Assembly: GCA_002269645.1 (NCBI GenBank)
Contig: NIVC01000001.1
Span: 1,302,001 to 1,366,000 of the forward strand
Direction: 5' to 3'
Source: Macrostomum lignano
Taxonomy: Eukaryota
Length of the DNA stretch: 64,000 nt
The notes beneath the pieces were generated by a model, which ran no database searches, was not told where the DNA came from, and was given only the letters and a program-made list of their open reading frames with translations. Shown here piece after piece: positions 10,988-49,277 of this stretch (the stretch's first letter is position 1; every line of letters starts with the position of its first letter). The translations under genes were made by a program, and so were the position numbers.

Positions 10988-11048
10988 TGAATTATAAGTT
11001 TCAGAAAATATGGATAACTGATTCGCTATCTCATTAATCGTTTTACAG

Positions 11049-21400: not shown

Positions 21401-24400
21401 TGCTCACATGCTTTATTCCCAATCTCTAATCCCATGATCCCAATGCTTACATACTATAATCCCAATCTCTAATCTTATGATCTCAATGCTCACATACTAT
21501 AATCCCAATCTCTAATCCCATGATCCCAATGCTCACATACTATAATCCCAATCTCTAATCCCATGATCCCAATGCTTACATACTATAATCCCAATCTCTA
21601 ATCCCATGATCCCAATGCTCACATACTATAATCCCAATCTCTAATCTTATGATCCCAATGCTCACATACTCTAATCCCATTATCCCAATGCTCACATACT
21701 ATAATCCCAATCTCTAATCCCATGATCTCAATGCTCACATACTATAATCCCAATCTCTAATCCCATGATCCCAATGCTCACATGCTATAATCTCAATCTC
21801 TAATCCCATGATCCCAATGCTCACATACTATAATCCCAATCTCTAATCCCATGATCCCAATGCTCACATACTAGAATACCAATCTCTAATCCCATGATCC
21901 CAATGCTCACATACTATAATCCCAATCTCTAATCCCATGATCCCAATGCTCACATGCTATAATCTCAATCTCTAATCCCATGATCCCAATGCTCACATAC
22001 TATAATCCCAATCTCTAATCCCATGATCCCAATGCTCACATACTATAATCTCAATCTCTAATCCCATGATCCCAATGCTCACATACTATAATCTCAATCT
22101 CTAATCCCATGATCCCAATGCTTACATACTATAATCCCAATCTCTAATCTTATGATCTCAATGCTCACATACTATAATCCCAATCTCTAATCCCATGATC
22201 CCAATGCTCACATACTATAATCTCAATCTCTAATCCCATGATCCCAATGCTTACATACTATAATCCCAATCTCTAATCCCATGATCCCAATGCTCACATA
22301 CTATAATCCCAATCTCTAATCTTATGATCCCAATGCTCACATACTCTAATCCCATTATCCCAATGCTCACATACTATAATCCCAATCTCTAATCCCATGA
22401 TCTCAATGCTCACATACTATAATCCCAATCTCTAATCCCATGATCCCAATGCTCACATGCTATAATCTCAATCTCTAATCCCATGATCCCAATGCTCACA
22501 TACTATAATCCCAATCTCTAATCCCATGATCCCAATGCTCACATACTAGAATACCAATCTCTAATCCCATGATCCCAATGCTCACATACTATAATCCCAA
22601 TCTCTAATCCCATGATCCCAATGCTCACATGCTATAATCTCAATCTCTAATCCCATGATCCCAATGCTCACATACTATAATCCCAATCTCTAATCCCATG
22701 ATCCCAATGCTCACATACTATAATCTCAATCTCTAATCCCATGATCCCAATGCTCACATACTATAATCCCAATCTCTAATCCCATGATCCTAATGCTCAC
22801 ATACTGGAATACCAATCTCTAATCCCATTATCCCAATGCTCACATACTATAATCCCAATCTCTAATCCCATGATCCCAATGCTCACATGCTATAATCTCA
22901 ATCTCTAATCCCATGATCCCAATGCTCACATACTATAATCCCAATCTCTAATCCCATGATCCCAATGCTCACATACTATAATCCCAATCTTTAATCCCAT
23001 GATCCCAATGCTCACATACTATAATCCCAATCTCTAATCCCATTATCCCAATGCTCACATACTATAATCCCAATCTCTAATCCCATTATCCCAATGCTCA
23101 CATACTATAATCCCAATCTCTAATCCCATGATCCCAATGCTCACATACTATAATCCCAATCTCTAATCCCATGATCCCAATGCTCACATGCTATAATCTC
23201 AATCTCTAATCCCATGATCCCAATGCTCACATACTATAATCTCAATCTCTAATCCCATGATCCCAATGCTCACATACTATAATCCCAATCTCTAATCCCA
23301 TGATCCCAATGCTCACATACTATAATCCCAATCTCTAATCCCATGATCCCAATGCTCACATACTATAATACCAATCTCTAATCCCATGATCCCAATGCTC
23401 ACATACTATAATCCCAATCTCTAATCCCATGATCCCAATGCTCACATACTATAATACCAATCTCTAATACCATTATCCCAATGCTCACACACTATAATCC
23501 CAATCTCTAATCCCATGATCCCAATGCTCACATACTATAATACCAATCTCTAATACCATTATCCCAATGCTCACACACTATAATCCCAATCTCTAATCCC
23601 ATGATCCCAATGCTCACATACTATAATACCAATCTCTAATACCATTATCCCAATGCTCACACACTATAATCCCAATGTCCCTCACCCTCATCTGGGTCAA
23701 TTCTCTAGGCACAAAAGTGTGTTACTGCCTGGAAACACACCTGGGGAAGTCAGTGTATTACTTAGTGTGTAACTGACGTGAGTGTACTCAGAGTTCCTAT
23801 TCATAATGGCAGGAAATCTTACTTATGTCCATCCCCCATCCTACTGCAATGTCCCCAATTCAGGAGGAGGTGGTCGCCCGCACCGAGGCCATCACGTCGG
23901 AGATCTACAAAATGCTGGAGGCGGCTCGCAGCGGATCGCACGATAATTTTTCTGAACAATCCAGACGCGTCAGGCAGGCCGTGCTGCGCATGACCGCCAT
24001 TGCGCCCAGGGTGCGTGCTGAGGGACATTTGCCTGTTAGCAGTGTACTCAACCCCTGTCATCAATGTACACACAGACCCATCAGCAATGTACATACAGAC
24101 CCATCAGCAATGTACACACAGAGCCCTATCAGCAATGTACACACAGACCCATCAGCAATGTACACACAGACCCATCAGCAATGTACACACAGTGCCCTAT
24201 CAGCAATGTACACACAGACCCATCAGCAATGTACACACAGACCCATCAGCAATGTACACACTGACCCATCAGCAATGTACACACAGACCCATCAGCAATG
24301 TACACACAGAGACCCATCAGCAATGTACACACAGACCCATCAGCAATGTACACACAGACCCATCAGCAATGTACACACAGAGACCCATCAGCAATGTACA

Positions 24401-25210
24401 CACAGACCCATCAGCAATGTACACACAGACCCATCAGCAATGTACACACTGACCCATCAGCAATGTACACAGAGACCCATCAGCAATGTACACACAGACC
24501 CATCAGCAATGTACACACAGACCCATCAGCAATGTACACACAGACCCATCAGCAATGTACACACAGAGACCCATCAGCAATGTACACACAGACCCATCAG
24601 CAATGTACACAGAGACCCATCAGCAATGTACACACAGAGACCCATCAGCAATGTACACACAGAGACCCATCGGCAATGTACACACAGACCCATCAGCAAT
24701 GTACACACAGAGACCCATCGGCAATGTACACACAGACCCATCAGCAATGTACACACAGACCCATCAGCAATGTACACACAGTGCCCCATCAGCAATGTGC
24801 ACACAGACCCATCGGCAATGTACACACAGACCCATCAGCAATGTACACACAGAGACCCATCAGCAATGTACACACAGAGACCCATCGGCAATGTACACAG
24901 AGACCCATCGGCAATGTACACACAGACCCATCAGCAATGTACACACAAACCCATCAGCAATGTACACACAGACCCATCAGCAATGTACACACAGAGACCC
25001 ATCAGCAATGTACACCCATCCCCACCTCTGCAGACGCAAGCCCACCAGCGCCAGGCCGTGGACGCGCTGCTGACGGCCGCGGACACACTGAGCGCGGAGT
25101 GCCGCAGCCCGCCCAGCCCCTCGGAGCTGAGCCGCCGCACCCAGCAGGTCATTCAGTGCTGCTTCGACATCGCCAAGGCTGCCAAAGCTCTGGTGACGCT
25201 GTTTCAGTAA
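11049..25210 (+). CDS. Git: GIT1/GIT2-family ARF GTPase-activating protein, multi-exon; the N-terminal ArfGAP zinc-finger exons lie left of the window
   Basis: Spliced translation matches GIT motifs in order: HPVKADFIKQKYQLLAF (end of ArfGAP), QLHASVRTPNLETSFRLLSLGANPNF (ankyrin), QYELTDRFSLYLCGR, ELCRDLYDELDRRD and STRNQGRQKLGRLSGREF (Spa2 homology), coiled coil, and TQQVIQCCFDIAKAAKALV (paxillin-binding). Introns are GT-AG. Confidence 0.95.
11325..12125. repeat. 21-bp minisatellite (GAGAATGGAGCAGATTGGGTG)n in a GIT intron
   Basis: About 38 tandem copies. Confidence 0.95.
12246..12647 (+). CDS. Git: GIT exon: ankyrin repeat with polyQ insertion, linker, start of Spa2-homology domain
   Basis: Phase 0 to 0; VELLLVYGASPTLPDGRGATPI...QYELTDRFSLYLCGR...LPDRVFQ. 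Confidence 0.92.
12330..12407 (+). repeat. Pure (CAG)26 coding repeat (polyQ)
   Basis: 78 nt of uninterrupted CAG, in frame within a GIT exon. Confidence 0.95.
12860..13075. repeat. ~28-bp minisatellite (GGTCATTGACAGTGTACATGTACATGTG)n
   Basis: Degenerate tandem copies in a GIT intron. Confidence 0.85.
13120..13690. repeat. 40-bp minisatellite (GCAGTCTAGTTTATGATCATAGATATAGCTTAGGTCATTG)n
   Basis: About 14 tandem copies. Confidence 0.95.
13814..14068 (+). CDS. Git: GIT exon: Spa2-homology (SHD) domain
   Basis: ELCRDLYDELDRRD...PHYSSTRNQGRQKLGRLSGREFGAILSD; donor GTGAGC. Confidence 0.93.
14160..15030. repeat. 13-15-bp minisatellite (TGTGAGGGGTGTC[TC])n
   Basis: GT-rich tandem array in a GIT intron. 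Confidence 0.9.
15167..15487 (+). CDS. Git: GIT exon: low-complexity region with DDPVYDTVPADSEY motif
   Basis: Phase-0 acceptor ccgccag, donor GTCAGT; the YDTV motif resembles DYDSV of vertebrate GIT. Confidence 0.75.
15885..17100. repeat. 26-bp minisatellite (GTCTCTGCGGGGTGTCTATGAGCAAT)n
   Basis: About 46 tandem copies. Confidence 0.95.
17146..17199 (+). CDS. Git: Possible small GIT exon (CTSLTIRKSKGRCTPSMS)
   Basis: AG at 17144-17145, GTGAGT donor at 17200, frame-preserving and stop-free; no homology support. Confidence 0.25.
17898..17943 (+). CDS. Git: Possible small GIT exon (SAAVCRNDNQFSLGF)
   Basis: Phase 0 to 1 would reconcile the 15487 donor with the 18691 acceptor; the acceptor choice in aacag-ccag is ambiguous. 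Confidence 0.3.
18008..18680 (+). repeat. Compound array: 34-bp unit x5, then 28-bp (CCCAGATCCTCAGTTGCTGGGCCAGCCT)n
   Basis: Tandem periodicity; the array ends just before the 18691 acceptor. Confidence 0.9.
18691..18863 (+). CDS. Git: GIT exon: disordered linker (DAESHSPQPGP...REERKE)
   Basis: Acceptor gccccag, strong GTGAGT donor at 18864, ends phase 0 as the next exon requires. Confidence 0.6.
19491..19646 (+). CDS. Git: GIT exon: coiled coil
   Basis: ILQPVASS...LRTMNARLAEENRQLRQRVDQLMAQ; acceptor gatttcag, donor GTCTGG; 156 nt. Confidence 0.8.
19712..20330. repeat. 22-bp minisatellite (GGGTGATGATGCTGGTCTCGGA)n
   Basis: About 28 tandem copies. Confidence 0.95.
20459..21307 (+). CDS. Git: GIT exon: end of coiled coil plus long Ala/Gln/Pro/acidic low-complexity region
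   Basis: 849-nt open frame NSDLSARLQQMLAAR...DYDQPP...RRPPTQ, flanked by cgcag and GTTGGT. Confidence 0.8.
21340..23675. repeat. 43-bp minisatellite (TAATCCCATGATCCCAATGCTCACATACTATAATCCCAATCTC)n
   Basis: About 54 copies filling a 2.5-kb GIT intron. Confidence 0.95.
23864..24010 (+). CDS. Git: GIT exon: paxillin-binding (FAT-like) domain, first half
   Basis: EEVVARTEAITSEIYKMLEAAR...VRQAVLRMTAIAPR, comparable to vertebrate EDVILKTEQVTKNIQELLRAAQ. Confidence 0.9.
24060..25020. repeat. 23/25-bp minisatellite (CCCATCAGCAATGTACACACAGA[GA])n
   Basis: Fills the last GIT intron. Confidence 0.95.
25034..25210 (+). CDS. Git: GIT terminal exon: paxillin-binding domain, second half
   Basis: TQAHQRQAVDALL...TQQVIQCCFDIAKAAKALVTLFQ then TAA. 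Confidence 0.93.
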   Translation, partial: TQAHQRQAVDALLTAADTLSAECRSPPSPSELSRRTQQVIQCCFDIAKAAKALVTLFQ

Positions 25211-26215: not shown

Positions 26216-26889
26216 TAGAATGAATTCGTTGCACCAGTTTTAATTGCTTTCACAATTTTTCTTGAGAGTAATTTTGCTAAACCCTGAAGTATTACTGTTG
26301 TACATTCAGTCAAGTCGGTGACTTGCTGCCAATAGAGGAAAATTTAATTCTCAGAAAAAATGATGAGAATCTCTCTGATTGGATTGCATGATTTTTCTAC
26401 AAATGTTATCACAATTCTGAGTGACTTTCCCTTATAACTAATTTTCTTACAAATTAGTTCAAATAAATGAATTTTTTTCACTGCTGCAATAATGAAACCG
26501 AATTATGATATTCTGTGATATTATCGTTATTATTCATAATTAATGTTTATTGTTAATTGCTTAGATATATTATCTAATCGTTTTGATACGAGTGTATTGG
26601 CATTATAAATATGATTTATTATTTGCTTTTGCAGATCAGTTTATTATCGAGCTATTGTGTTATGAGTTCAACTTTAGCAGCTTGTGCAGCAAATATACTG
26701 AATATTGCTGATGTTCCTTATACACAATATTTAGAATGTCCTTTACTGCTTCATTTTTATGCTTCTACTTTAACTTCAATAGGAACTTAACATTGTATTA
26801 GGCCTAATGTTAGATCACTGCAGAGCATGTCTATAATTTTTTTTGGATTTTTTTTCTTGCCAGTTATCTCTGTCTTAGTGTCCTCCTGC

Positions 26890-27097
26890 TGTCTGTCTGT
26901 CTGTCTGTGTGTCTGTCTGTCTGTCTGTGTCTATCTGTCTGTCTGTGTGTCTGTCTGTCTGTCTGTGTCTGTCTGTCTGTCTGCCTGTCTGTCTGCCTGT
27001 CTGTCTGTCTGTCTGTCTGTGTGTCTGTCTGTGTCTGTGTCTGTCTGTCTGTCTGTCTGTCTGTGTCTGTCTGTGTCTGTCTGTCTGTCTGTCTGCC

Positions 27098-27136
<39 letters not shown>

Positions 27137-27199
27137 GTCTGTCTGTCTGTCTGTCTGTCTGTATGTTTGTCTGTCTGTCTGTCTGTCTGTATGTCTGTA

Positions 27200-27238
<39 letters not shown>

Positions 27239-27247
27239 ATGTTTGTA

Positions 27248-27284
<37 letters not shown>

Positions 27285-27310
27285 GTCTGTCTGTCTGTCT
27301 ATCCATCTGT
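26890..27310. repeat. (TCTG)n microsatellite
   Basis: About 420-bp imperfect tetranucleotide tract upstream of the ETNK ATG. Confidence 0.95.
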
Positions 27311-27348
27311 CAGTCAGCCTCACTGCTCCAACCCTCAGCTAACCAGTT

Positions 27349-27723
27349 ATGTCGCACCCCAGCGCGCCCAGCAACCAGCCAAATGTGCTGCACCTGCCGC
27401 AGCTGTCCATCACGGAGGAGAACTGGTCGGCCGGCTTGCAGTCGCTGCTGGATCATGTCCGACCCACTTGGCAGCTTGCCAACTGTGGCCAGCGCCTGTT
27501 CACCGAGGGCATCACCAACAAGCTGGTCGCGCTGCACTATGGCGAGCGATTCCAATTCGGTGATGACGTCATCCTTATTCGAATCTACGGCGAGAAGACC
27601 GAACTGATAATTGACCGCCAGGCGGAGGTGCGCAACATGCGGCTGCTGCACTTGCACGGCTTCTGCAAGCCCGTCTACGCCACCTTCGCCAACGGCCTCT
27701 GCTACGGATACGTTCACGGAGAT
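27349..27723 (+). CDS. ETNK1: Ethanolamine kinase exon 1
   Basis: ATG at 27349, donor GTGAGT at 27724. Confidence 0.92.
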
Positions 27724-30700: not shown

Positions 30701-30733
30701 AAGGCTAAGAAGGCTGAGCGGCTGGCGTGCTGA
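27349..30733 (+). CDS. ETNK1: Ethanolamine kinase (ETNK/easily-shocked family), 3 exons, about 364 aa
   Basis: Exons 27349-27723, 28708-29153 and 30460-30733 join in frame. Motifs: [34 protein letters not shown] (Brenner motif), [43 protein letters not shown]. Confidence 0.96.
27880..28680. repeat. 22-bp minisatellite (AGCTGTCATAAAACTGTCAGGA)n
   Basis: Lies in ETNK intron 1. Confidence 0.95.
28708..29153 (+). CDS. ETNK1: Ethanolamine kinase exon 2
   Basis: Acceptor catgcag; HND and IDFEY motifs; phase-2 donor. Confidence 0.94.
29205..29920. repeat. 19-bp minisatellite (AGAGTAGTGTCTACCTGTC)n
   Basis: About 37 copies in ETNK intron 2. Confidence 0.95.
29982..30380. repeat. 15/17-bp minisatellite (GGCTCAGA[GA]GTGTACA)n
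   Basis: Second array in ETNK intron 2. Confidence 0.95.
30460..30733 (+). CDS. ETNK1: Ethanolamine kinase exon 3
   Basis: (R)[15 protein letters not shown]...KAERLAC then TGA. Confidence 0.94.
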
Positions 30734-30824
30734 GGCCTTCAGACTGGCCTCCGGTTCTGACTGCATACCGCTGTGTCGCTTTGCTCTTCATCAGTTTCTG
30801 CATACCGCCTTGACTCCTCTGCAT

Positions 30825-31215
30825 CTTTCTCTCCTCTCTCTCCAGCCTCCTCTCCTCCCTCTGCATCTTCCTCTCCTCCCTCTGCATCTTCCTCTCCTTC
30901 CTCTGCAGCTTCCTCTCCTCCCTCTGCATCTTCCTCTCCTCCCTCTGCAGCTTCCTCTCCTCCCTCTGCAGCTTCCTCTCCTCCCTCTGCAGCTTCCTCT
31001 CCTCCCTCTGCAGCTTCCTCTCCTCCCTCTGCAGCTTCCTCTCCTCCCTCTGCAGCTTCCTCTCCTCCCTCTGCATCTTCCTCTCCTCCCTCTGCAGCTT
31101 CCTCTCCTCCCTCTGCAGCTTCCTCTCCTCCCTCTGCAGCTTCCTCTCCTCCCTCTGCATCTTCCTCTCCTCCCTCTGCATCTTCCTCTCCTCCCTCTGC
31201 ATCTTCCTCTCTTCC
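30825..31215. repeat. 21-bp pyrimidine-rich minisatellite (CCTCTGCAGCTTCCTCTCCTC)n
   Basis: Immediately 3' of the ETNK stop; probably 3' UTR. Confidence 0.93.
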
Positions 31216-31739
31216 TTCAAATCTGTCAGTTAAGGCTTGGTTTGTGAGTTTTTGCCAATTCAAACTGCCAGCTTTATTTCCTGTTAGGCTTAGATATTAT
31301 TGACAATTGACAATTATGATTGATATATATGATTGATGCGGCCTTGATTTTTATGCATGGTAATTACTAGTACCTAGACTTTAAAATGAGTTTAATTAAA
31401 TGAATTTATTATTGTTAATATGAATCCACACAGTCGCATCATTTCCTTGCAAACTTACTCGATCTGTGCCTTGCTAAACTCTTGTCTTCTATACTACTTA
31501 CTAGCTGCCCTTTGTTAGTAGTGTGAGACCAAAATATTATGTGTGGAATGTTTATAATTATTTAATTAAGCTAATAGAATTTTTCTCAAATTTGAACTGT
31601 CCGAAGAGCTGGAAAAAGTCCTCTTTTTATTGCCTAAATTTATTTCATTGCCATCGGTTGATAAAAGCATCGAACCTGCTGTTTCTTGAGTTCTTTTTTT
31701 ACCTGCATGCAGATGCTCTGATACAGTATTGGCAGTGCC

Positions 31740-33790
31740 AAGTAGATACCACTAATCTATAGGTAGACACCACTAATCTCTAATGGTAGACACCACTAAT
31801 CTATAGGTAGACACCACTAATCTATAGGTAGACACCACTAATCTATAGGTAGACACCACTAATCTCTAATGGTAGACACCACTAATCTATAGGTAGACAC
31901 CACTAATCTATAGGTAGACACCCACTAATCTCTAAAGGTAGACAACACTAATCTATAAGTAGACACCACTAATCTATAGGTAGACACCCACTAATCTCTA
32001 AAGGTAGACACCACTAATCTATAGGTAAACACCCACTAATCTTAATCTCTAAAGGTAGACACCACTAATCTCTAAAGGTAGACACCACTAATCTCTAGGT
32101 AGACACCACTAATCTATAGGTAGACACCACTAATCTCTAATGGTAGACACCACTAATATATAGGTAGACACCACTAATCTATAGGTAGACACCACTAATC
32201 TATAGGTAGACACCCACTCATCTCTAAAGGTAGACGCTCACTAATCTCTAAAGGTAGACACCACTAATCTACAGGTAGACACCACTAATCTCTAAAGGTA
32301 GACACCACTAATCTATAAGTAGACACCACTAATCTATAGGTAGACACCACTAATCTATAGGTAGACACCACTAATCTCTAATGATGGACACCACTAATTT
32401 ATAGGTAGACACCACTAATCTATAGGTAGACACCACTAATCTATAGGTAGACACCACTAATCTCTAATGGTAGACACCACTAATATATAGGTAGACACCA
32501 CTAATCTATAGGTAGACACCACTAATCTATAGGTAGACACCCACTCATCTCTAAAGGTAGACACTCACTCATCTCTAAAGGTAGACGCTCACTAATCTCT
32601 AAAGGTAGACACCACTAATCTACAGGTAGACACCACTAATCTCTAAAGGTAGACACCACTAATCTATAAGTAGACACCACTAATCTATAGGTAGACACCA
32701 CTAATCTCTAAAGGTAGACACCACTAATCTCTAAAGGTAGACACCACTAATCTATAGGTAGACACCCACTCATCTCTAAAGGTAGACACTCACTCATCTC
32801 TAAAGGTAGACACTCACTAATCTCTAAAGGTAGACACCACTAATCTATAGGTAGACACCCACTCATCTCTAAAGGTAGACACTCACTCATCTCTAAAGGT
32901 AGACACTCACTAATCTCTAAAGGTAGACACCACTAATCTATAGGTAGACACCACTAATCTCTAAAGGTAGACACCACTAATCTATAAGTAGACACCACTA
33001 ATCTCTAAAGGTAGACACCACTAATCTCTAAAGGTAGACACCACTAATCTATCGGTAGACACCCACTCATCTCTAAAGGTAGACACTCACTCATCTCTAA
33101 AGGTAGACACTCACTAATCTCTAAAGGTAGACACCACTAATCTATAGGTAGACACCACTAATCTCTAAAGGTAGACACCACTAATCTATAAGTAGACACC
33201 ACTAATCTATAGGTAGACACCACTAATCTCTAAAGGTAGACACCACTACTCCACAGGTAGACACTAATCTACAGGTAGACACTAATCTACAGGTAGACAC
33301 TCACTAAATCTACAGGTAGACACTAATCTACAGGTAGACACTCACTAAATCTACAGGTAGACACTAATCTACAGGTAGACACTCACTAAATCTACAGGTA
33401 GACACTAATCTACAGGTAGACACTCACTAAATCTACAGGTAGACACTAATCTACAGGTAGACACTACTCCACAGGTAGACACTAATCTACAGGTAGACAC
33501 TAATCTACAGGTAGACACTCACTAAATCTACAGGTAGACACTAATCTACAGGTAGACACTCACTAAATCTACAGGTAGACACTAATCTACAGGTAGACAC
33601 TACTCCACAGGTAGACACTTATCTACAGGTAGACACTAATCTACAGGTAGACACTCACTAAATCTACAGGTAGACACTAATCTACAGGTAGACACTCACT
33701 AAATCTACAGGTAGACACTAATCTACAGGTAGACACTCACTAAATCTACAGGTAGGCACCACTACTCTATAGATGAAGTAGGTAGACTCT
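31740..33790. repeat. Compound 18-24-bp minisatellite (GGTAGACACCACTAATCTATA / ACAGGTAGACACTAATCT)n
   Basis: About 2 kb, with the unit changing from 5' to 3'. Confidence 0.95.
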
Positions 33791-34010
33791 ATAGACTCTA
33801 TAGGTAGAAAACACTATTCTTCGGGTAAGCACTACTCTACAGGCGGATATTTGTCCACTACTAGGCACTACATCAGTGCAGTGCAAATAGACACCAATAC
33901 ATTGTCAGGCAGTTCATCCAGCACAGAACGTCACTCTGCCCTGAAGACTATTATCGCTGTTAACACCAGCTGCCAGCCACTTAGCAGTCGGGGCCCCTTC
34001 AATTCTTCAG

Positions 34011-34610
34011 GCGTCGTCAGGCAGCCGCGGTTCAACCCGGTCATCGGCCGCATCTGCTCAAATTCGACTGACCAGCCGCAGCCGTCAGCAACCGCCGGCA
34101 GAGCAGCTGCAGCAGCCGCGCACCCGCAGCCAAAGAGCCTCCACGGGGACCCCCGCCACTCAGCAGCGACAACAGCAGCAGCAACAGCTGCCGCGGCGAT
34201 CGCGGCAGCAATCGTTGAAGCCGCCGCCGCCTCCGAGCTCCAATAGCGGCGCCAACTGCCGCGCCGAGGCCGCTACATCAGGTCGCGGACGCCGCCGTTG
34301 TCATGACAACAACGCCTCGACTGGCGGCAGAGTCGGCGCCAATGAAGACAACGGTGAAGCCTCTGGCGGCAAGCGGAGCCGGCAGTCGGCCTCGATCTGC
34401 TGCCCGATCTGCCTGGACAGCCTGGACACCTTCGAGGACTCCGGCAAGCGCCTGGTGTCGGCCTACTGCGGCCACCTGTTCTGCTCGCTCTGCCTGGCTG
34501 CCGTGGAGGCGCGGCCGGCAGCTGACGGGGCCGCCTACTTCGGCTGCCCGGTGTGCCAGGTGCCGCTGAGGACGGGCGCCAGCCACCACCCGGTGTACTG
34601 GACCAGCTGA
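34011..34610 (+). CDS. RNF4: RNF4/Degringolade-like C3HC4 RING E3 ligase; 199-codon frame with no Met, 5' end unresolved
   Basis: CPIC-x18-CGH-LF-CSLC-x17-CPVC followed by HPVY, resembling the RNF4 RING (CPICMD...VSTECGHVFCSQC...CPTC...HPIY). The frame is open from the acceptor ttcttcag at 34010; in-frame TGA at 33942. Confidence 0.75.
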   Translation, partial: ASSGSRGSTRSSAASAQIRLTSRSRQQPPAEQLQQPRTRSQRASTGTPATQQRQQQQQQLPRRSRQQSLKPPPPPSSNSGANCRAEAATSGRGRRRCHDNNASTGGRVGANEDNGEASGGKRSRQSASICCPICLDSLDTFEDSGKRLVSAYCGHLFCSLCLAAVEARPAADGAAYFGCPVCQVPLRTGASHHPVYWTS

Positions 34611-35248
34611 GCTCGACCAGCAGTCGCATTTACACAGTCTCAAGCCTTTGTTTCCGGAGAGGCTGTTCGGAACTCAGCTGCCAACAATTGTCAAACAATT
34701 TTATTTAATATTTAAACTCCCATTTTTATTCACCAGCTAAAAGGAAAAATATTTTCATTTTTTCGTTTAATTAAACGCACGCCTAATCATAACTGCTTCA
34801 TTGCTTGTGCATTTGTCACATTTGCTACTTTAAGTAGCCTAATAAGAGTGCGTGCAACGATATTCGAAGGCCCGCTGTGACTTTATTTATTTCGCGAGAA
34901 TGATTTTTTTCAAAATACGCAAGTTTTTTTTGCTTTCTTTATTTTTTAGACAACAGTTGCATAAAACCGCAAATTCTAGAAAAACTAAGCATACCACTTG
35001 CAATTAAAGTTATGAAAAAAGTTGCTATAGCCTCTACTCTTTCAGTAGTTTGTCTGCGCAGTGTTACTACAATTTATTTTGGCAGTTAAAATTTTCTTTC
35101 TTTATACTAGCGTATAACCAGGGTTTGTGGCCTCAGGATTAAATGGGGTAGGAATAAACAGCAAACATTTAACTCGATGTACACAAGCGAACGCAAGACG
35201 GACGAAACCCAGTCTAGGGCAGGCCTCAGCCAATATGGCAGCCACAGA

Positions 35249-35401
35249 CAGCCAATGAGAGAGCAGTAAGGAGAGAGGTCAAAGTCAAATGAATGAAAAT
35301 CAACCTAGGGACAGGCCCAATGTGGCTCAGCCAATGAGAGAGCAGTAAGGAGAGAGGTCAAAGTCAAATGAATGAAAATCAACCTAGGGACAGGCCCAAT
35401 G
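35249..35401. repeat. 79-bp tandem duplication hosting the foldback insertion
   Basis: CAGCCAATGAGAGAGCAG... at 35249 and 35328, resuming after the element at about 36013. Confidence 0.8.
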
Positions 35402-35998
35402 GGCTACCGGACATTTGCCCTCCGGCATTTGCCCTCCGGACATTTGCCCTCCGGCATTTCCCCTCCGGACATTTGCCCTCGAGGACATTTGCCCTCGGGG
35501 ACATTTGCCCTCGGGGACATTTGCCCTCCGGACATTTGCCCTCGGGGACATTTGCCCTCGGGGACATTTCCCCTCTGGAAAAGTACAGGTAAGGCTGGGG
35601 ATAGGGTAGGGCGCGGGTATATATTGCTTACTAGAAAAGGATGAGTTGTTGGCTGGAGAAGAACCTGATGGATGCAAGAGGCGGGAGGATGAGGTTGGTG
35701 CTGGAGGAACGACGGGTGGGTACAGGAGGAGGTGAGGTGAGTAATGTGCGAGGGGGTAAATTTGCAGAGGGCAAATGTGCGGAGGGGAAATGTCCGGAGG
35801 GCAAATGTCCGGAGGGCAAATGTCCGGAGGGCAAATGTCCCCGAGGGCAAATGTCCCCGAGGGGAAATGTCCGGAGGGCAAATGTCCGGAGGGGAAATGT
35901 CCCGGAGGGCAAATGTCCGGAGGGCAAACGCCGCCGAGGGGAAGTGCCGGAGGGCAAGTGCCGGAGGGGAAGTGCCGGAGGGCAAATGTCCGGAAGCG
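35402..35998. mobile_element. Non-autonomous foldback/Mutator-like MITE (597 bp) with a 9-bp TSD
   Basis: TSD GGCCCAATG at 35393-35401 and 35999-36007. Termini GGCTACCGGACATTTGCCC and (reverse complement) CGCTTCCGGACATTTGCCC. Arms are built of inverted 15-16-bp GGACATTTGCCCTCC repeats. Confidence 0.85.
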
Positions 35999-38550
35999 GG
36001 CCCAATGTGGCTCAGCCAATGAGAGAGCAGCAAGGAGAAAGAAAAAAGTCTGACATCTTTATTGGCCTGGCTGTGCAACCCCTTTTCTCTTGCTGGCTAT
36101 GCACACGCACCGTATTTGATTTTTTCTGCTATCTTCAATATTAGTATATTTGTGTATAAAACTGAAGCAGTGAGTATTTTGTTTCATATCATACCTCAGC
36201 ATTTCAGCATCATCTTATACAAGGGAAAGCATTTACAATCTACAGGGGAAGATTTTAAGCTACCTTACACTTCACGTAGCGCTCTCAATGCTCGGAATGT
36301 CGACACAGAAATATTCATGTCAGAAACTACTTAAGACTTGCTTGTAGCCTCGTGTTTGGCATTGTGACACAATCAATTCCAAAGAATCCAGACGGCTTTG
36401 AGCAGGATGTGGTAACAGTTGTACTTGGCAATGAGAAGCCCAATCGTGCCTTTTAGGGGACTGGACTCAACAAGCATCCTTACAGAAAGCGTCTCTTCTG
36501 AAGTTTCCTAATAGAAGTCTGTAAATTTTTCTTATTTGCTGCGTTAAATTTAGCCTTTTCGATCACCAGAGCCAAGATAACAAGGAATACTGATATGCAA
36601 ACACTTGTCTCAGTCAACACTCTGGTCGTTAATTTTTTATCTTTGGTCATTGGCCAAATATTTAATCGTTGACTCATTTACATGTGTAAGTTTTTCCGGT
36701 CAAATAGCAAAATAGCTCAAAGTTCAAATACTCGTAACTCAGTTCAAGTGAGACACGTTCAATTCAAGTGACAACAAGCCAAATCAAACTGCAAATTGTC
36801 AATTCGTAGTTAACAAAATATCCAGTCAAGTGCGCCAAGTGCAAGTAGCTATTCTTCTCTTCGCTCAAATACGTCTATCAATCGCTGCTTATGGTCGGTC
36901 CCAGCGGATATTCTGGCTCGTGCGACAGCAATGTACTGTTGAGTTGGCTTTGTCGTATTTCGTTTGGCCAAGTTTCGTAACAGCTGGGTAATATTGGGAA
37001 GAGCTCAGAATTAGTGTTTTCGGAAAGAAAACGCAAACCAAAGCTGGCAGTATGCCAAGTCGACTCTACGAGTACAACGACGAGAAGTCACACTAAAAGT
37101 CGCCTAAGAGTCAATATTAGGCGTTTTACTGTCTGCGACTCTGAAACCACTCTGGAGCACTACTATAATGACTCTTTGGTTGAGTACGAGCTAGAGTCGT
37201 GCTTGAGTCGCTGTAGAATCACAGAGTTGCGTCTACCGGTAAAGCGCATCTGCGTCGCATTTCGCATTTATAACAACTCTATTTAGTCTACTTGAGTTAG
37301 TAGAGATTTAAGCGCTAACACAACGACTCTTGAATGAAGTTTTGAGACTCTTACGATTCTGAAACTCGCGTGATGCCTCTCAGTTAAATTACAGTTGTTT
37401 GAATCGTTAGTGTTAAAAAATTCGTCCCAGAGTCGCTAGAGTGAGTTGTTTGCAATGACTCTGATGCTTGTCGCGGCTTGTGTAGCAGTTTTCAAAAATT
37501 CAAAAGCCGCTAATTTCTCGTGCTTCATCTAGTTCTGTAAAGGAAGGTTCTTTATCAGCGACCTCTAGTTTGTCGAGCATCCAGATGGCCCAGACAATCG
37601 AGCAACCATCAATACAGGTCGTGCAAATAATAAGGATAGACGACAAATATCATTTCTATTTATTTCCACAGAATCTCTTTTTGGCCTCCCGACTACTCGC
37701 GCCGAGGTTAAAAACAAATTAGACGCAGCACCCAAGCTGCCCAAATCGATTTGACGTTGGTCAAACGGCGCCAATCCGCGCAGTTTTAGTCTATTTAGTT
37801 CGGGGAACTTGTAACAGAAGCGAAAATGTTACTGTAAGTAATAAGAATAGATTAGAAGAGTATTTTGAGAGTGTTATTCGAGTCAAAATAGATTACACAG
37901 AAAGCTCGATAACACAGCCAGCTACGACTTAAGTAGGCCGTGTGCGCGCACTGAGCCCCGCGCTAAAACTGTGTGTTGTTTTGTGAAATTCGAAACCAAA
38001 CTAGCCAAGTAAAGATTAAGGAAATAATAGTTGTGCTGAAATTATCTATAGAAAGCAGCAAAGATCAGGATAGCCTTGGTTAGCAATCGGATAGAATCAC
38101 AATATATATGCATAGCAGGGTACTCTTACCGAACAGTGCAGTATGGCACAGGTAGCAGACAGTAAGTTACAAATCTACCTATTTTATTTGCTGCATGGGA
38201 AATATGAAAAATTAGGGAAAGCAAAAACAGAGATTAATGTTAAAACAGGACAATATCATGTGGCGCAAACTGCAGAGCTGTTAATAGCAAATCCACAGAG
38301 TACGGAGAAGCGTATTAAAACAATACAATTGCGAAAGAAAAAATCGAGGCAATGCAATAATTAAAAAATATTTAAATTTGTGTGCCGACAATAGACAGCG
38401 CAGGTATTGCAACAACTTGAGCTTGCTTCAATAATTAACTGTCTTTAAGTCATAGGTAATCTATAAGTAGATAAATTAAACTGATAAGGAAATTGCAGTA
38501 GTGTGTGGATCATACATACCTGCACGCTGCACTGACTAGCACTACCATTT

Positions 38551-39523: not shown

Positions 39524-42500
39524 CTGTGCGATATCGATTAGTGCAAAAATATGCATAATATTGCTTAACAAACAAATTTCCACATGCTCAGAATAAGGAC
39601 TACTGAAGTTAAAAACAGGAAGCCTCATTCTTATAGTTTTGAAGGCCGGTCTTTTGACAAAAAAGGCACTACACAGACCATAAAGGTGTTCAATTTTGTT
39701 TCAATTTGAATTCGTCCTTGATTTCAAATGCGAGCTAAAAACTCTCTCTGATTGAAATTTGCATAAAAGGTGGAGTCAGATTGCTTCTATACAGCTGTGT
39801 TTAAAATGCAACAATTTGTAACTGGCGACTGCGTGTGGCTCAGCACCTCACGGGGAATTCATTTGACTTTTATCTCTGCCGCTTAACCCTTGAACTGCGG
39901 GCCTGGGACACAGAGGCACTTGGCAACCCGCTGTAAACTGGCTATTTATTAAACTGAAAATATTCTGCGCAGCCCTGCGTTTACAAGTAACTTTTTACAT
40001 TTTAGACGGATAAAAACTGTAGACTAGTAAAAAAGAGACAGTTACAGTTCAGCAACGAAGGTGGTAGACCAGCAACTGGGGATCTGGGAGGTTGGCCCAG
40101 CAACTGAGGATCTGGGAGGCTGGCCCAGCAACTGACACTCTGGGAGGCTGGCCCAGCAACTGACACTCTGGGAAGCTGGCCCAGCAACTGACACTCTGGG
40201 AGGCTGGCTCAGCAACTGAGGATCTGGGAGGCTGGCCCAGCAACTGAGGATCTGGGAGGCTGACCCAGCAACTGGGGGTCTGGGAGGCTGGCCCAGCAAC
40301 TGAGGATCTGGGAGGCTGGCCCAGCAACTGAGGATCTGGGAGGCTGGCCCAGCAACTGACACTCTGGGAGGCTGGCCCAGCCACTGACACTCTGGGAGGC
40401 TGGCCCAGCAACTGACACTCTGGGAAGCTGGCCCAGCAACTGACACTCTGGGAGGCTGGCACAGCAACTGAGGATCTGGGAGGCTGGCCCAGCAACTGAG
40501 GATCTGGGAGGCTGGCCCAGCAACTGGGGGTCTGGGAGGCTGGCCCAGCAACTGAGGATCTGGGAGGCTGGCCCAGCAACTGACACTCTGGGAGGCTGGC
40601 CCAGCAACTGACACTCTGGGAGGCTGGCCCAGCAACTGACACTCTGGGAGGCTGGCTCAGCAACTGAGGATCTGGGAGGCTGGCCCAGCAACTGACACTC
40701 TGGGAGGCTGGCTCAGCAACTGAGGATCTGGGAGGCTGGCCCAGCAACTGAGGATCTGGGAGGCTGGCTCAGCAACTGGGGATCTGGGAGGCTGCCCTAG
40801 CAACTGAGTTCTGGCAGAGCTAGATCAAGTGATGCTTTAGGAGTTCACTGTGATATTAACGTGGTGCTGTGTAATTTTTAAACAAAAAATGATTCGCAAA
40901 GATTAAGGCAAATCTACTGCGCTGCCAGTGTTTGCCTCATCAATAAATATTAAATATGAAAGAAAGTAAACAAAAAGCCAACGAAATTAAACTACAATTC
41001 AGTGCTAAAAATAAATTGCCTAAATAGTCAATATTTACAAGAATGGATAATGCTTCAGATAAATAAAACTTTCAGCTGCAATTGTTAATTAGTCCAGATC
41101 GAGGTTGCGTATTTGATTGCTAATTACTGTTTTAGAATCTATATAACTAAATCTGAGAAAAGCTTCTGATATAAAAGAAACTAGCAGCTTACAGAGCGGA
41201 CAGAGCATACACAGAAGGTCGTCTCCACGGAACTAAGGGGGCGGAGAAGGCGGGCTGAAGTGAAGACAGATAGCGGATAAGCTCGCTGACTGACTCACTG
41301 GCAGCAGAGCTGGTAATTATCGGCAAACATACAGGCAAGCAAACATGGCTGATGCTAATGAATCATTATCGATTTCTATGCTAGATGATTTCTGATTGGC
41401 TGATGCTAATGAATCATTATCGATTTCTATGCTAGATGATTTCTGATTGGCTGATGCTAATGAATAATTATCGATTTCTATGCTAGATGATTTTTGATTG
41501 GCTGATGCTAATGAATCATTATCGATTTCTATGCTAGATGATTTCTGATTGGCTGATGCTAATGAACCATTATCGATTTCTATGCTAGATGATTTCTGAT
41601 TGGCTGAACATAATCATCAATCAGTTGCTAGAATACTTGTTAAAATTATGTGATTAAAATATATTACGAATAAACTATTAAATACAGCTTCTCTGCTCAC
41701 CTTCGGCAGACGCGAGCCGGCCACGGACGGGAAATCGTGATGCTCATTGTGGTAGCCAACATTGAAGGTGATGCAGTTGAGCAAGCCGTAATAACTGTAG
41801 GTTTCATAGCCCTTCTTAAACATGTAGTGCTCGGAGATGAAGTGCCCAGCAACCGGGTGAATGCCCAGAGACAGCAGGGTGCCAACTACCATGTAGACCA
41901 GGGGCTTGAATCCTAGAAAGTACACCACCAGAACATCAAAACCGAGCTGTACAGCGATGTTGATAGCCTCCAGCTTGGTCATGGGCATCGGATAGAGCAC
42001 CAGCGGCCGAATGCTATAGAATAGCGGCTGCAGGAACAGCCAGATCAGCTTAGTGAAGCTGTTGCAGAACAGCATGCCCTCCATTCTGCTCGGCAAGTCC
42101 ATGTCCCGCTTATCGTCACCTTGGTAGCGATGATGCTCCAGATGATATTTCTTGAAGCTGACGCTGTAGGGAACTCCAATAGGCAGGTTGGCAAAGATGC
42201 CCAGAGCTCGATTGGCCATTGGCCGGGCGTGGCCGAATGCCAGATTATGCGAGATCTCGTGAATGGCCAGCGTCATTGAATGGTTAATTGTGCCACCGAG
42301 TACGTAAGAGAGAAGCAGCAACTGCCACCAAGGCGGATTCAGCTGGGCGATGGCAACAATGGAGGCCAGCTGGAAGGCCACCATGCCCAGTACGATCCAT
42401 TTGAGCCGCGGGTCCGGGCCCATCAGCTCTTTGATCTCCGGGTGTTCGGCTAGACAAAATTTAAGATTTTCGTAAATTTAACTGGCAAGATGTTACACCT

Positions 42501-44779
42501 GCCTACTTATTAACATTTAGTAGTATGATGGGGTTTCTTCTGTTGCGGAACTCCGGCCCACGAAGCTTTTCTATCCGGCCCTCGTGTCCTTTAAAACTTC
42601 ACAATATAGCAATCCGGCCCGCCCAACGTTGACATCACTTCTCAAGCTCTCTTATCTTCTCTCCTCTCCTCTTATCTTCTCTCCTCTTATCTTATTTTCT
42701 CTCCTCTTATCTTCTCTCCTCTCCTCTTATTTTCTCTCTTCGTATCTTCTCTCCTCCCCTCTTATCTTCTCTCCTCTCCTCTCCTCTCATTTCTAATCCT
42801 CCGTCCTCTCTCCTCTCCTTCTTATTTCTAATCCTCCATCCTCTCTCCTCTCCTCTCATTTCTAATCCTCCATCCTCTCTCCTCTCCTCTCATTTCTAAT
42901 CCTCCATCCTCTCTCCTCTCCTCTCATTTCTAATCCTCCATCCTCTCTCCTCTCCTCTCATTTCTAATCCTCCATCCTCTCTCCTCTCCTCTCATTTCTA
43001 ATCCTCCATCCTCTCTCCTCTCCTCTCATTTCTAATCCTCCATCCTCTCTCCTCTCCTCTCATTTCTAATCCTCCATCCTCTCTCCTCTCTTCTCATTTC
43101 TAATCCTCCATCCTCTCTCCTCTCCTCTCATTTCTAATCCTCCATCCTCTCTCCTCTCTTCTCATTTCTAATCCTCCATCCTCTCTCCTCTCCTCTCATT
43201 TCTAATCCTCCATCCTCTCTCCTCTCCTCTCATTTCTAATCCTCCATCCTCTCTCCTCTCTTCTCATTTCTAATCCTCCATCCTCTCTCCTCTCCTCTCA
43301 TTTCTAATCCTCCATCCTCTCTCCTCTCTTCTCATTTCTAATCCTCCATCCTCTCTCCTCTCCTCTCATTTCTAATCCTCCATCCTCTCTCCTCTCCTCT
43401 CATTTCTAATCCTCCATCCTCTCTCCTCTCCTCTCATTTCTAATCCTCCATCCTCTCTCCTCTCATTTCTAATCCTCCATCCTCTCTCCTCTCCTCTCAT
43501 TTCTAATCCTCCATCCTCTCTCCTCTCATTTCTAATCCTCCATCCTCTCTCCTCTCCTCTCATTTCTAATCCTCCATCCTCTCTCCTCTCCTCTCATTTC
43601 TAATCCTCCATCCTCTCTCCTCTCCTCTCATTTCTAATCCTCCATCCTCTCTCCTCTCATTTCTAATCCTCCATCCTCTCTCCTCTCCTCTCATTTCTAA
43701 TCCTCCATCCTCTCTCCTCTCATTTCTAATCCTCCATCCTCTCTCCTCTCATTTCTAATCCTCCATCCTCTCTCCTCTCCTCTCATTTCTAATCCTCCAT
43801 CCTCTCTCCTCTCATTTCTAATCCTCCATCCTCTCTCCTCTCCTCTCATTTCTAATCCTCCATCCTCTCTCCTCTCATTTCTAATCCTCCATCCTCTCTC
43901 CTCTCATTTCTAATCCTCCATCCTCTCTCCTCTCCTCTCATTTCTAATCCTCCATCCTCTCTCCTCTCATTTCTAATCCTCCATCCTCTCTCCTCTCCTC
44001 TCATTTCTAATCCTCCATCCTCTCTCCTCTCATTTCTAATCCTCCATCCTCTCTCCTCTCCTCTCATTTCTAATCCTCCATCCTCTCTCCTCTCCTCTCA
44101 TTTCTAATCCTCCATCCTCTCTCCTCTCCTCTCATTTCTAATCCTCCATCCTCTCTCCTCTCATTTCTAATCCTCCATCCTCTCTCCTCTCCTCTCATTT
44201 CTAATCCTCCATCCTCTCTCCTCTCATTTCTAATCCTCCATCCTCTCTCCTCTCTTCTCATTTCTAATCCTCCATCCTCTCTCCTCTCCTCTTATTTCTA
44301 ATCCTCCATCCTCTCTCCTCTCCTCTCATTTCTAATCCTCCATCCTCTCTCCTCTCATTTCTAATCCTCCATCCTCTCTCCTCTCATTTCTAATCCTCCA
44401 TCCTCTCTCCTCTCCTCTCATTTCTAATCCTCCATCCTCTCTCCTCTCATTTCTAATCCTCCATCCTCTCTCCTCTCCTCTCATTTCTAATCCTCCATCC
44501 TCTCTCCTCTCATTTCTAATCCTCCATCCTCTCTCCTCTCATTTCTAATCCTCCATCCTCTCTCCTCTCCTCCCCGCTCTCATCTGGCCCGCAGCCGTGA
44601 CACATTCTTAGACTTCTATCAATTATTGATAGCAAATTTTGAGTAATCTTCTGCAACTTCGATCCAGGATGCCCAATGGCACTGCGATGCAACTCACCTA
44701 GAATCAGCTTTCGCCTAGTAGCGTGCGGTTCCTCGGTATAAACCCATTCGAAATCGGTTCGCGACACCGACTGGCCCAT
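39176..44779 (-). CDS. DEGS1: Sphingolipid delta(4)-desaturase DES1, 3 exons, about 392 aa
   Basis: Exons 44779-44698, 42449-41701 and 39523-39176. [25 protein letters not shown]-terminus, His boxes HEISH, HLEHH and HNEHH, and GPYSRVKR. In-frame GT-AG junctions. Confidence 0.97.
40068..40810 (-). repeat. 28-bp minisatellite, same family as 18180-18680
   Basis: (CAGCAACTGAGGATCTGGGAGGCTGGCC)n on +, the reverse complement of the GIT-intron unit. Confidence 0.95.
41346..41606. repeat. 51-bp tandem repeat x5
   Basis: TGGCTGATGCTAATGAATCATTATCGATTTCTATGCTAGATGATTTCTGAT at a 51-bp period. Confidence 0.93.
41701..42449 (-). CDS. DEGS1: DEGS1 exon 2 (three His boxes)
   Basis: [13 protein letters not shown]...GSRLPK; GTGAGC donor. 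Confidence 0.96.
42640..44575. repeat. 29/34-bp TC-rich minisatellite (TTTCTAATCCTCCATCCTCTCTCCTCTC[CTCTC]A)n
   Basis: Fills DEGS1 intron 1. Confidence 0.95.
44698..44779 (-). CDS. DEGS1: DEGS1 exon 1
   Basis: Lipid desaturase N-terminal motif; GTGAGT donor, phase 1. Confidence 0.95.
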
Positions 44780-49195: not shown

Positions 49196-49277
49196 TATTT
49201 GCTTAACAGAATCCCCTAATAGAAAATGCTGTCTACGCAACAGGCTGTCCTAAGTTCCTGTCAGATAATTTGCAAAT

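What the first reader, a model, noticed from the sequence alone, without database searches (positions are those of the whole stretch)
34002..34610. Methionine-less RNF4-like RING ORF that may take its start codon from a trans-spliced leader
Seen: the RING frame is open for 199 codons from a polypyrimidine-AG acceptor (ATTCTTCAG|GCG TCG TCA) and contains no Met codon. An in-frame TGA lies at 33942, and I found no convincing ATG-bearing exon between the ETNK stop (30733) and here; the interval is mostly minisatellite. The acceptor is exactly phase 0. Established: flatworm spliced leaders end in AUG, which can serve as the initiator methionine. Inference: SL trans-splicing would give M-A-S-S-G-S-R... 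in an AUGG context, making translation of this E3 ligase dependent on trans-splicing.
Basis: partly seen in the sequence, partly recalled or inferred. Interest (0 to 1): 0.75.

Follow-up and report, generated by a model that had tools for sequence, protein, structure and literature searches.

The report
Start-codon-less RING gene in a flatworm
A small RNF4-type RING ubiquitin-ligase gene of the flatworm Macrostomum lignano has no ATG of its own and sits directly behind a textbook trans-splice acceptor, so it most likely borrows its start codon from the spliced leader; that mechanism is already known in flatworms, and it could not be shown for this gene without RNA reads.

Summary
Window 34011-34610 (+) is a 199-codon frame with no ATG. 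An in-frame TGA lies at 33942, and the frame starts right after CCCCTTCAATTCTTCAG.

The window is Macrostomum lignano Mlig_3_7. GenBank already annotates this gene, and its two homeologous copies, as 5'-partial CDSs.

- The acceptor matches the published M. lignano trans-splice motif.
- It has the best polypyrimidine tract nearby.
- It is the only AG nearby that puts the leader's terminal AUG in the RING frame.
- It is perfectly conserved between homeologs.
- It marks the switch from non-coding to coding composition and from 7.1% to 1.9% divergence.

The decisive step, spliced-leader addition at 34011, could not be tested because no reads or transcripts were reachable.

Complications:
- The homeologs carry an in-frame ATG 39 codons upstream. 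In the window it is ATA, followed by the TGA.
- A conserved ATG|GTAAT in the ETNK 3' region could act as a cis donor.
- The annotated 5' ends are ragged, not at the acceptor.

The protein has an RNF4-type RING but no SUMO-interaction motifs.

Leader-donated start codons were shown in flatworms in 2006. At best this is a new member of a known kind, of modest interest.

The parts
33994..34010 (+). Polypyrimidine tract plus AG acceptor (CCCCTTCAATTCTTCAG); proposed SL trans-splice site, with the exon starting at 34011
   Evidence: 13 of 15 pyrimidines, the best of all AGs in 33900-34060. CTTCAG matches the M. lignano trans-acceptor motif [T/C]TNCAG (PMC8629364). It is the only AG that gives an SL-AUG ORF in the RING frame. 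It is identical in homeologs L002 and L003.
34011..34610 (+). Met-less coding exon: 199 codons plus TGA. The N-terminal ~125 aa form a low-complexity S/R/Q/P-rich region.
   Evidence: GC3 is 0.79, against 0.41 just upstream. Divergence from the homeolog is 1.9%, against 7.1% upstream. pN/pS is 0.35 and the one indel is 24 nt, in frame.
34032..34610 (+). GenBank (GCA_002269645.1, NIVC01000001.1) 5'-partial CDS, 192 aa, starting STRSS...
   Evidence: The homeolog copies are named 'BOX15_Mlig012610g3, partial' and start 39 nt after the acceptor.
34401..34559 (+). C3HC4 RING domain (residues 131-183), with a 7-residue insertion between zinc ligands 6 and 7
   Evidence: Pfam hits. RNF4 RINGs are the best PDB matches. 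All eight zinc ligands are invariant in an alignment with RNF4-like proteins.
34584..34607 (+). RNF4-type C-terminal tail HHPVYWTS (compare RNF4 YHPIYI), ending the protein just after the RING
33942..33944 (+). In-frame TGA closing the frame upstream; it reads TGC in the homeologs
33897..33899 (+). ATA at the position where homeologs L002 and L003 have an in-frame ATG (L002 9845), 38-39 codons upstream of the acceptor
   Evidence: The chance of such an open upstream ATG is about 0.23, and GC3 of that leader is 0.44.
30731..30733 (+). Stop codon of the upstream same-strand ethanolamine kinase gene (ETNK, 364 aa)
31395..31400 (+). ATTAAA, the only canonical poly(A) signal between the ETNK stop and the RING exon; the likely end of the ETNK 3'UTR
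   Evidence: conserved in the homeologs
30816..31215 (.). 21-bp minisatellite in the ETNK 3' region
31742..33808 (.). 21/44-bp minisatellite arrays that fill most of the ETNK-RING interval
31357..31365 (+). ATG|GTAATT, the only non-repeat phase-0 'ATG then donor' candidate for a cis exon. It resembles the SL exon/intron junction TTGCATG|GTAAG.
   Evidence: conserved as TTGCATGGTAAT in the homeologs. No RNA evidence either way.
34770..34775 (+). ATTAAA, candidate poly(A) signal of the RING gene, about 160 nt after its stop

Best explanation
The exon at 34011-34610 is the single coding exon of a small RING E3 ligase gene of Macrostomum lignano. The gene lies downstream of ethanolamine kinase on the same strand. 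Its primary transcript starts either at its own promoter or as read-through from ETNK in an operon-like unit. The region upstream of 34010 is removed as an outron, and the 35-nt spliced leader (...CAATTTATTGCATG) is joined to G34011. The leader's terminal AUG then becomes the first and only in-frame AUG, giving M-A-S-S-G-S-R... (200 aa). The product has a disordered S/R/Q/P-rich N-terminus and an RNF4-type dimerising RING at the C-terminus.

Shown here: the ORF, the lack of any ATG, the acceptor, its phase, its conservation, the onset of coding signal, and the RING.

Inferred: that the leader is added at this site, that translation starts at its AUG, and that the protein is an active E3.
For: 1. 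The species is M. lignano. The DEGS neighbour is 100% identical to BOX15_Mlig017531g1, and the window maps to NIVC01000001.1.
2. The M. lignano SL ends in ATG, 30-39% of its genes are trans-spliced, and the trans acceptor motif is [T/C]TNCAG (PMC8629364; PMC5730564; PMC10468722).
3. CTTCAG|G at 34005-34011 matches that motif, has 13 of 15 pyrimidines upstream, and is the only AG in 33900-34060 that puts the SL AUG in the RING frame.
4. GC3 rises from 0.41 (33945-34010) to 0.79 in the ORF, like ETNK at 0.82.
5. Window-versus-homeolog divergence is 7.1% upstream and 1.9% in the ORF (Fisher p=4e-4). pN/pS is 0.35 and the indel is in frame. All six differences in the 'leader' 33897-34010 are non-synonymous or disruptive.
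6. The RNA-seq-based GenBank models of all three copies are single-exon and 5'-partial. They begin 21 or 39 nt downstream of the acceptor. This is what end-to-end read mapping would give for a weakly expressed trans-spliced mRNA.
7. The repeat-adjusted distance from ETNK is 810 nt from the stop and about 520 nt from ATTAAA. Both are under the 1 kb operon criterion of PMC8629364.
8. No near-cognate codon in the first 70 codons has a purine at -3.
9. There is precedent: in S. mansoni the SL AUG is in frame in 28% of trans-spliced mRNAs, and more than 40 cDNAs need it (Cheng et al. 2006, as summarised in PMC9851317).
Against: No read, EST or transcript with the leader on this exon could be reached.

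The published pipeline cuts genes exactly at leader-read peaks, yet the annotated starts are ragged and not at 34011. So no strong leader peak was recorded here.

The homeologs keep an in-frame ATG with an open frame 39 codons upstream, so a conventional start is possible there.

A conserved ATG|GTAAT at 31357 could act as a cis donor.

Phase 0 alone has a one-in-three chance.

pN/pS below 1 is not significant (p=0.09).
Confidence: 0.5

Rival explanations
1. Conventional gene in decay. The ancestral gene starts at a genomic ATG 39 codons upstream of 34011 on an unspliced mRNA. That ATG is kept in homeologs L002 and L003 at 9845. The window copy has lost it (ATG to ATA at 33897-33899) and gained a TGA at 33942. 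On this reading the window copy is a start-less, redundant duplicate of a recently polyploid genome that is no longer translated, or only poorly.
For: L002 and L003 have an in-frame ATG and an open frame through to the RING (230 aa), while the window has ATA plus TGA. M. lignano carries many duplicated genes (PMC10468722). GenBank marks all copies as partial. pN/pS below 1 is not significant.
Against: The annotated transcripts of L002 and L003 begin 156 nt downstream of that ATG. The 39-codon leader has non-coding composition (GC3 0.44, against 0.79). An open in-frame ATG upstream arises by chance in 23% of shuffles. All six window/homeolog differences in the leader change or destroy the reading. 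The ATG context is poor (C at -3, C at +4). The window ORF is still intact over 199 codons with every zinc ligand in place.
Confidence: 0.22
2. Cis-spliced start. The acceptor at 34010 (or the AAG at 33946) receives an upstream cis exon. One option is a donor in the ETNK 3' region that ends in ATG (31357-31359|GTAATT), which would give the same M-A-S-S-G protein from an ETNK-RING bicistronic or alternative transcript. The other is a donor inside the last ETNK exon, giving an ETNK-RING fusion as in UniProt models A0A1I8GLH0 (678 aa) and the 427-aa model P0126.
For: A scan of 30734-34010 finds one non-repeat phase-0 'ATG then GT' site, at 31357. It is conserved in the homeologs and resembles the SL junction. 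Older gene models join the ETNK donor GC|GTGCTG to acceptors at 33946 or 34010. Flatworm acceptors are often shared between cis- and trans-splicing (PMC12582326).
Against: The RNA-seq-guided Mlig_3_7 annotation keeps ETNK (364 aa, own stop) and the RING gene separate and single-exon in all three loci. The fusion models also swallow the tail of the GIT gene and skip the ETNK Met. One of them needs a frame change not present in Mlig_3_7, which is typical of ab initio merging. In Mlig_3_7 the ETNK GC|GT donor joined to 34011 is out of frame and stops after 18 codons, read directly from the sequence. The 22 linker codons have GC3 of 0.41. The site at 31357 lies upstream of the ETNK poly(A) signal, and GTAATT lacks the G at +5.
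Confidence: 0.12
3. The mRNA starts at its own TSS close to or inside 34011-34050. It either initiates at a non-AUG codon in the RING frame or is translated from the first AUG (34303, +1 frame, 88 aa), so the RING frame is little used or not used.
For: The annotated 5' ends (34032; +39 nt in the homeologs) are not at a splice site. The ATG at 34303 is conserved in the homeologs.
Against: No near-cognate codon in the first 70 codons has a favourable context. The +1 ORF is an arbitrary reading through GC-rich RING-coding sequence. The RING frame carries the domain, the GC3 signal and the constraint.
Confidence: 0.06

Closest known systems
Flatworm mRNAs that take their initiator methionine from the 3'-terminal AUG of the spliced leader (Cheng, Cohen, Ndegwa & Davis 2006, J Biol Chem 281:733; 'slORFs' of PMC9851317)
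   Same: The species has a leader ending in AUG. A strong acceptor lies directly at the first codon. The leader AUG is in frame with an ORF that has no AUG of its own before, or anywhere in, the conserved domain.
   Different: Leader addition and initiation are not shown for this gene. The species is the free-living M. lignano, not Schistosoma. The homeologous copies still have a possible genomic ATG upstream of the acceptor.
RNF4 / SUMO-targeted ubiquitin ligases (PDB 4AP4, 3NG2, 2XEU)
   Same: C-terminal C3HC4 RING with RNF4-type sequence (CPICxD...SG+xxxSxxCGHxFCxxC...CPxC), an H-P-aromatic tail, and a protein that ends just after the RING.
   Different: No SIM-like hydrophobic/acidic motifs anywhere in the 199 residues. 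There is a 7-residue insertion between ligands 6 and 7. Gln sits where RNF4 has the Arg after the last Cys (read from the alignment; that this Arg matters for activity is from my own knowledge). So it is RNF4-like in its RING only.
M. lignano operons resolved by SL trans-splicing (Ustyantsev & Berezikov 2021, PMC8629364)
   Same: Same-strand gene pair ETNK then RING, conserved in three loci. The intergenic distance is inflated by minisatellites and drops below 1 kb once repeats are subtracted.
   Different: Trans-splicing of the downstream gene, which is required by their definition, is not documented here.

Membership tests
SL-AUG-initiated flatworm mRNA (slORF) | The organism adds a spliced leader whose last three bases are AUG | tested here: met
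   The window is M. lignano. The SL is CGGTCTCTTACTGCGAAGACTCAATTTATTGCATG (PMC8629364; PMC5173321; PMC10468722).
SL-AUG-initiated flatworm mRNA (slORF) | The leader is actually joined to this pre-mRNA at the proposed acceptor | not testable with these tools
   No reads or transcripts were reachable. Exact-sequence look-ups of SL-prefixed products and a scan for the junction sequence were negative. The GenBank 5' ends are ragged.
SL-AUG-initiated flatworm mRNA (slORF) | The leader AUG is in frame with the main ORF, with no intervening stop | tested here: met
   ATG plus the exon from 34011 gives 200 aa ending at the RING stop. All other AGs nearby give ORFs of 100 aa or less, in other frames or stopped early.
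SL-AUG-initiated flatworm mRNA (slORF) | The mature mRNA has no genomic in-frame AUG that could serve instead | tested here: met
   There is no Met codon in 33945-34607. The only ATGs (34303, 34342) are in the +1 frame.
SL-AUG-initiated flatworm mRNA (slORF) | Translation starts at the leader AUG | not testable with these tools
   This needs ribosome profiling, N-terminal proteomics or reporter assays.
RNF4 / STUbL | C-terminal RNF4-type C3HC4 RING with an aromatic tail | tested here: met
   RNF4 chains are the top PDB hits (about 1e-9 for a single RING). All eight ligands and the HP-aromatic tail align.
RNF4 / STUbL | A cluster of SUMO-interaction motifs in the N-terminal half | tested here: not met
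   A regex scan for [VIL][VIL][DE][VIL]-type and related SIM cores finds none in the ORF. The related proteins P0131-P0133 show VVDLT motifs.
M. lignano operon (downstream gene) | Adjacent same-strand genes with a repeat-adjusted intergenic distance under 1 kb | tested here: met
   3277 nt in total and 810 nt after removing TRF arrays; about 520 nt from the ETNK ATTAAA. The criterion comes from PMC8629364.
M. lignano operon (downstream gene) | The downstream gene is SL trans-spliced | not testable with these tools
   As above: no read-level data.

The most novel reading that the evidence does not exclude
The three homeologous copies may catch a gene in the middle of handing its start codon over to the spliced leader. 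L002 and L003 still carry a usable genomic ATG upstream of the acceptor. The window copy has lost it (ATA plus TGA) and would be translatable only through the leader AUG. That would make this a natural within-genome pair for testing whether trans-splicing lets genes shed their own start codons. A second unusual possibility is that the SL-like TTGCATG|GTAAT in the ETNK 3'UTR acts as a cis 'private leader', giving the same protein from a bicistronic transcript.
Probability: 0.1. Interest if true: 0.5.

Novelty: new member of a known kind. Interest (0 to 1): 0.3.

Why it matters
If confirmed, this is a clean example in a transgenesis-capable flatworm model of a conserved-domain gene that cannot be translated without trans-splicing.

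It has practical value for annotation. GenBank lists the gene as '5' partial', and UniProt carries chimeric ETNK-RING models, because pipelines do not add the leader's ATG. A systematic pass for '5'-partial CDS directly behind YTNCAG in phase 0' would complete many M. lignano gene models.

Biologically it adds little to the principle established in 2006.

Tried and rejected
1. Protein searches for homologues or transcript-derived products of the RING ORF gave no hits. The 90% cluster that holds it is represented by ETNK because of a chimeric model.
2. Exact look-ups of 11 hypothetical products all returned 'not in the collection'. They were the SL-AUG form in both copies, SL read-through prefixes, the paralog ATG form, TTG-start forms and stop-to-stop forms.
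3. A scan of metagenome contigs for the SL-exon junction gave 0 hits. A scan for the exon's first 21 nt gave 4 unrelated GC-rich contigs, which are chance matches.
4. The window holds no SL RNA gene and no Rfam family at gathering score, and nothing meaningful lies around 31150-31750.
5. Supplements and full text were searched for the gene identifiers, with no hit. Wasik et al. 2015 is not held.
6. The UniProt fusion models P0125 and P0126 were considered as evidence for cis-splicing and rejected as ab initio merges on an older assembly.
7. The 'g3' in the locus tag was first read as 'third gene of a transcriptional unit'. That was rejected: the prefix is a 95% identity cluster name, so the suffix most likely numbers copies.
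8. Non-AUG initiation: no candidate codon has a good context.

Full report
WHAT IS THERE

Window 33945-34610 (+) is open, contains no Met codon and ends in TGA at 34608-34610. It is closed upstream by TGA at 33942-33944. Counted from the AG at 34009-34010, the frame is 199 codons (GCG TCG TCA GGC...).

Residues 131-183 are a C3HC4 RING (Pfam zf-RING_UBOX 7e-8, zf-C3HC4 1e-6). Its best solved relatives are RNF4 RING domains (about 1e-9 for single RINGs). In an alignment with RNF4-like proteins from the 1.8-billion-protein library, all eight zinc ligands and the C-terminal His-Pro-aromatic tail are conserved. A 7-residue insertion lies between ligands 6 and 7. The N-terminal 125 residues are low-complexity S/R/Q/P. 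They contain no SUMO-interaction motif, unlike the RNF4 relatives, which show VVDLT repeats. So the protein is RNF4-like in its RING only.

WHERE IT COMES FROM AND WHAT IS ALREADY ANNOTATED

- A neighbouring sphingolipid desaturase exon is 100% identical to Macrostomum lignano BOX15_Mlig017531g1.
- The window maps exactly onto GenBank assembly GCA_002269645.1 (Mlig_3_7), contig NIVC01000001.1.
- GenBank already has a gene here: a single-exon, 192-aa CDS that begins at window 34032 (STRSS...) without a start codon.
- Two further loci, L002 (NIVC01000982.1) and L003 (NIVC01001379.1), are almost identical to each other. They carry the same gene order: GIT, ETNK, RING, then DEGS on the opposite strand.
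- Their RING gene is named 'BOX15_Mlig012610g3, partial' and starts 39 nt after the equivalent acceptor.
- These starts are not at AG dinucleotides, so they are ragged ends of RNA-seq-based models.
- The published pipeline mapped reads end-to-end and cut genes at peaks of leader-containing reads (PMC5730564). The ragged starts therefore mean that no leader peak was used here. They are also what one expects for the first tens of bases of a weakly expressed trans-spliced mRNA, because reads that include leader sequence do not map.
- Two UniProt models from the older assembly (678 aa and 427 aa) fuse ETNK to the RING exon. They use an ETNK donor GC|GTGCTG five bases before the ETNK stop, joined to acceptors at 33946 or 34010.
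- These models also absorb the tail of the GIT gene and skip the ETNK Met. One needs a frame change absent from Mlig_3_7. I read them as ab initio merges forced by the missing start codon.

TESTS OF THE TRANS-SPLICING IDEA THAT SEQUENCE ALLOWS

The M. lignano leader is CGGTCTCTTACTGCGAAGACTCAATTTATTGCATG. Between 30% and 39% of genes receive it, and the enriched trans-acceptor motif is [T/C]TNCAG (PMC8629364; PMC5730564). The Macrostomum genome paper calls the final ATG a translation start codon (PMC10468722).

1. Acceptor quality. CTTCAG|G at 34005-34011 matches the motif. It has 13 pyrimidines in the 15 bases upstream, the best of the twelve AGs between 33900 and 34060. It is the only one at which ATG plus exon reads through the RING (200 aa). 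The motif occurs about 2.4 times per kb per strand in the window.
2. Coding onset. GC3 is 0.30-0.45 up to 34010, 0.50 in 34011-34070 and 0.6-1.0 beyond. The overall ORF value of 0.79 is like ETNK at 0.82-0.83 and DEGS at 0.72.
3. Conservation. Against the homeolog, divergence is 7.1% over 33740-34010 and 1.9% in the ORF (Fisher p=4e-4). In the ORF there are 5 synonymous and 5 non-synonymous changes (pN/pS 0.35, one-sided p=0.09) and one 24-nt in-frame indel. The acceptor and its immediate flanks are identical.
4. Search for a cis start. Between the ETNK stop and 34010 there are only five places where an ATG-initiated frame reaches a GT in phase 0. All five are bare ATG|GT. Four lie in the minisatellite. 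The fifth is ATG|GTAATT at 31357.
5. Non-AUG starts. No near-cognate codon in the first 70 codons has a purine at -3.
6. Position. ETNK lies upstream on the same strand in all three loci. Of the 3277 nt between them, 75% is minisatellite. The remainder is 810 nt, or about 520 nt from the only poly(A) signal (ATTAAA, 31395). Both are below the 1 kb repeat-adjusted operon threshold used for this species.

WHAT COMPLICATES IT

In L002 and L003 the RING frame stays open for 41 codons upstream of the acceptor and contains an ATG 39 codons upstream (L002 9845). In the window that codon is ATA (33897-33899), and the TGC further on is TGA. This could mean the gene once had, and the homeologs still have, a conventional start, with the window copy being a decaying duplicate.

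Four points count against that reading:
- The annotated homeolog transcripts start 156 nt downstream of that ATG.
- The 39 codons have non-coding composition (GC3 0.44).
- All six window/homeolog differences in that stretch change or destroy the reading.
- An open in-frame ATG upstream of the acceptor turns up in 23% of shuffles.

The ATG|GTAATT at 31357 is conserved in the homeologs as TTGCATGGTAAT. It looks oddly like the leader's own exon-intron junction (TTGCATG|GTAAG). It lies inside the presumed ETNK 3'UTR and could in principle donate the same ATG in cis. No annotated model supports this.

WHAT COULD NOT BE DONE

No RNA-level data were reachable:
- Protein searches do not see the RING cluster.
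- Eleven guessed transcript-derived products are not in the collection.
- Junction and exon patterns found nothing relevant in metagenome contigs.
- The gene identifiers are absent from the held papers and supplements.

VERDICT

I put this at about 0.5.

The rivals are:
- a conventional upstream ATG in the homeologs with a decaying window copy (0.22);
- a cis-spliced start (0.12);
- an internal TSS with non-AUG or other-frame translation (0.06).

The principle has been established for flatworms since Cheng et al. [quoted passage not shown] So this is at best a new member of a known kind. Its main value is as an annotation fix and as a convenient test case in a transgenic model.

Noticed in passing
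window 44779-44790 (- strand): The start codon of the sphingolipid desaturase gene sits directly after a motif-matching acceptor (AACTACAG|ATGGGCCAG). If the leader is added there, its AUG would be in frame and adjacent to the genomic AUG (M-M-G-Q...). That arrangement is one mutation away from the RING gene's ATG-less state.
   Followed up: partly
window 27335-27351 (+): The ETNK ATG (27349) lies 10 nt after CCCTCAG. A leader added there would place its AUG out of frame upstream of the ETNK start.
   Followed up: no
window 31340-31365; L002 about 8235-8260: TTTATGCATG|GTAATT (TTTTTGCATGGTAAT in the homeologs) resembles the 3' end of the SL exon plus its donor (ATTTATTGCATG|GTAAG). The rest of the SL is absent and there is no Rfam hit. 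It may be chance in AT-rich sequence, or a relic.
   Followed up: partly
UniProt A0A1I8GLH0 (P0125, 678 aa) and P0126 (427 aa): Public protein models chimerically fuse GIT-tail + ETNK + RING, or ETNK + RING. Because of them, the RING protein clusters under an ETNK representative and is invisible to representative-based searches.
   Followed up: yes
window 23825-25210 (+): The last part of the GIT (ArfGAP) gene holds a minisatellite that stays open in frame as a 461-aa ORF (HQQCTHRPISNVHTDPSAMYTQT repeats). The older protein model splices it out.
   Followed up: no
window 2400-12100, 14600-16200, 18200-18900, 26800-27340, 35250-36000, 40040-40750, 48770-49250: Very dense minisatellite arrays with strong strand composition skew. 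Many keep long spurious ORFs in several frames. The same unit family (…[23 protein letters not shown]…) occurs at 18.2-18.9 kb (+) and 40.0-40.7 kb (-).
   Followed up: no
window 56377-57414 (-): A degenerate mariner/Tc1-like transposase split over three ORFs, with weak Pfam hits to HTH_32, HTH_48, Transposase_1 and DDE_3.
   Followed up: partly
L003 2900-10000: In L003 no ETNK protein is annotated between GIT and the RING gene, although the ETNK 3' end motif is present at 8421. The ETNK copy there may be disrupted or simply unannotated.
   Followed up: no
window 34303-34569 (+): The first genomic ATG of the exon opens an 88-aa +1-frame ORF overlapping the RING, and it is conserved in the homeologs. 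It would be the first AUG on any mRNA that lacks the leader.
   Followed up: partly
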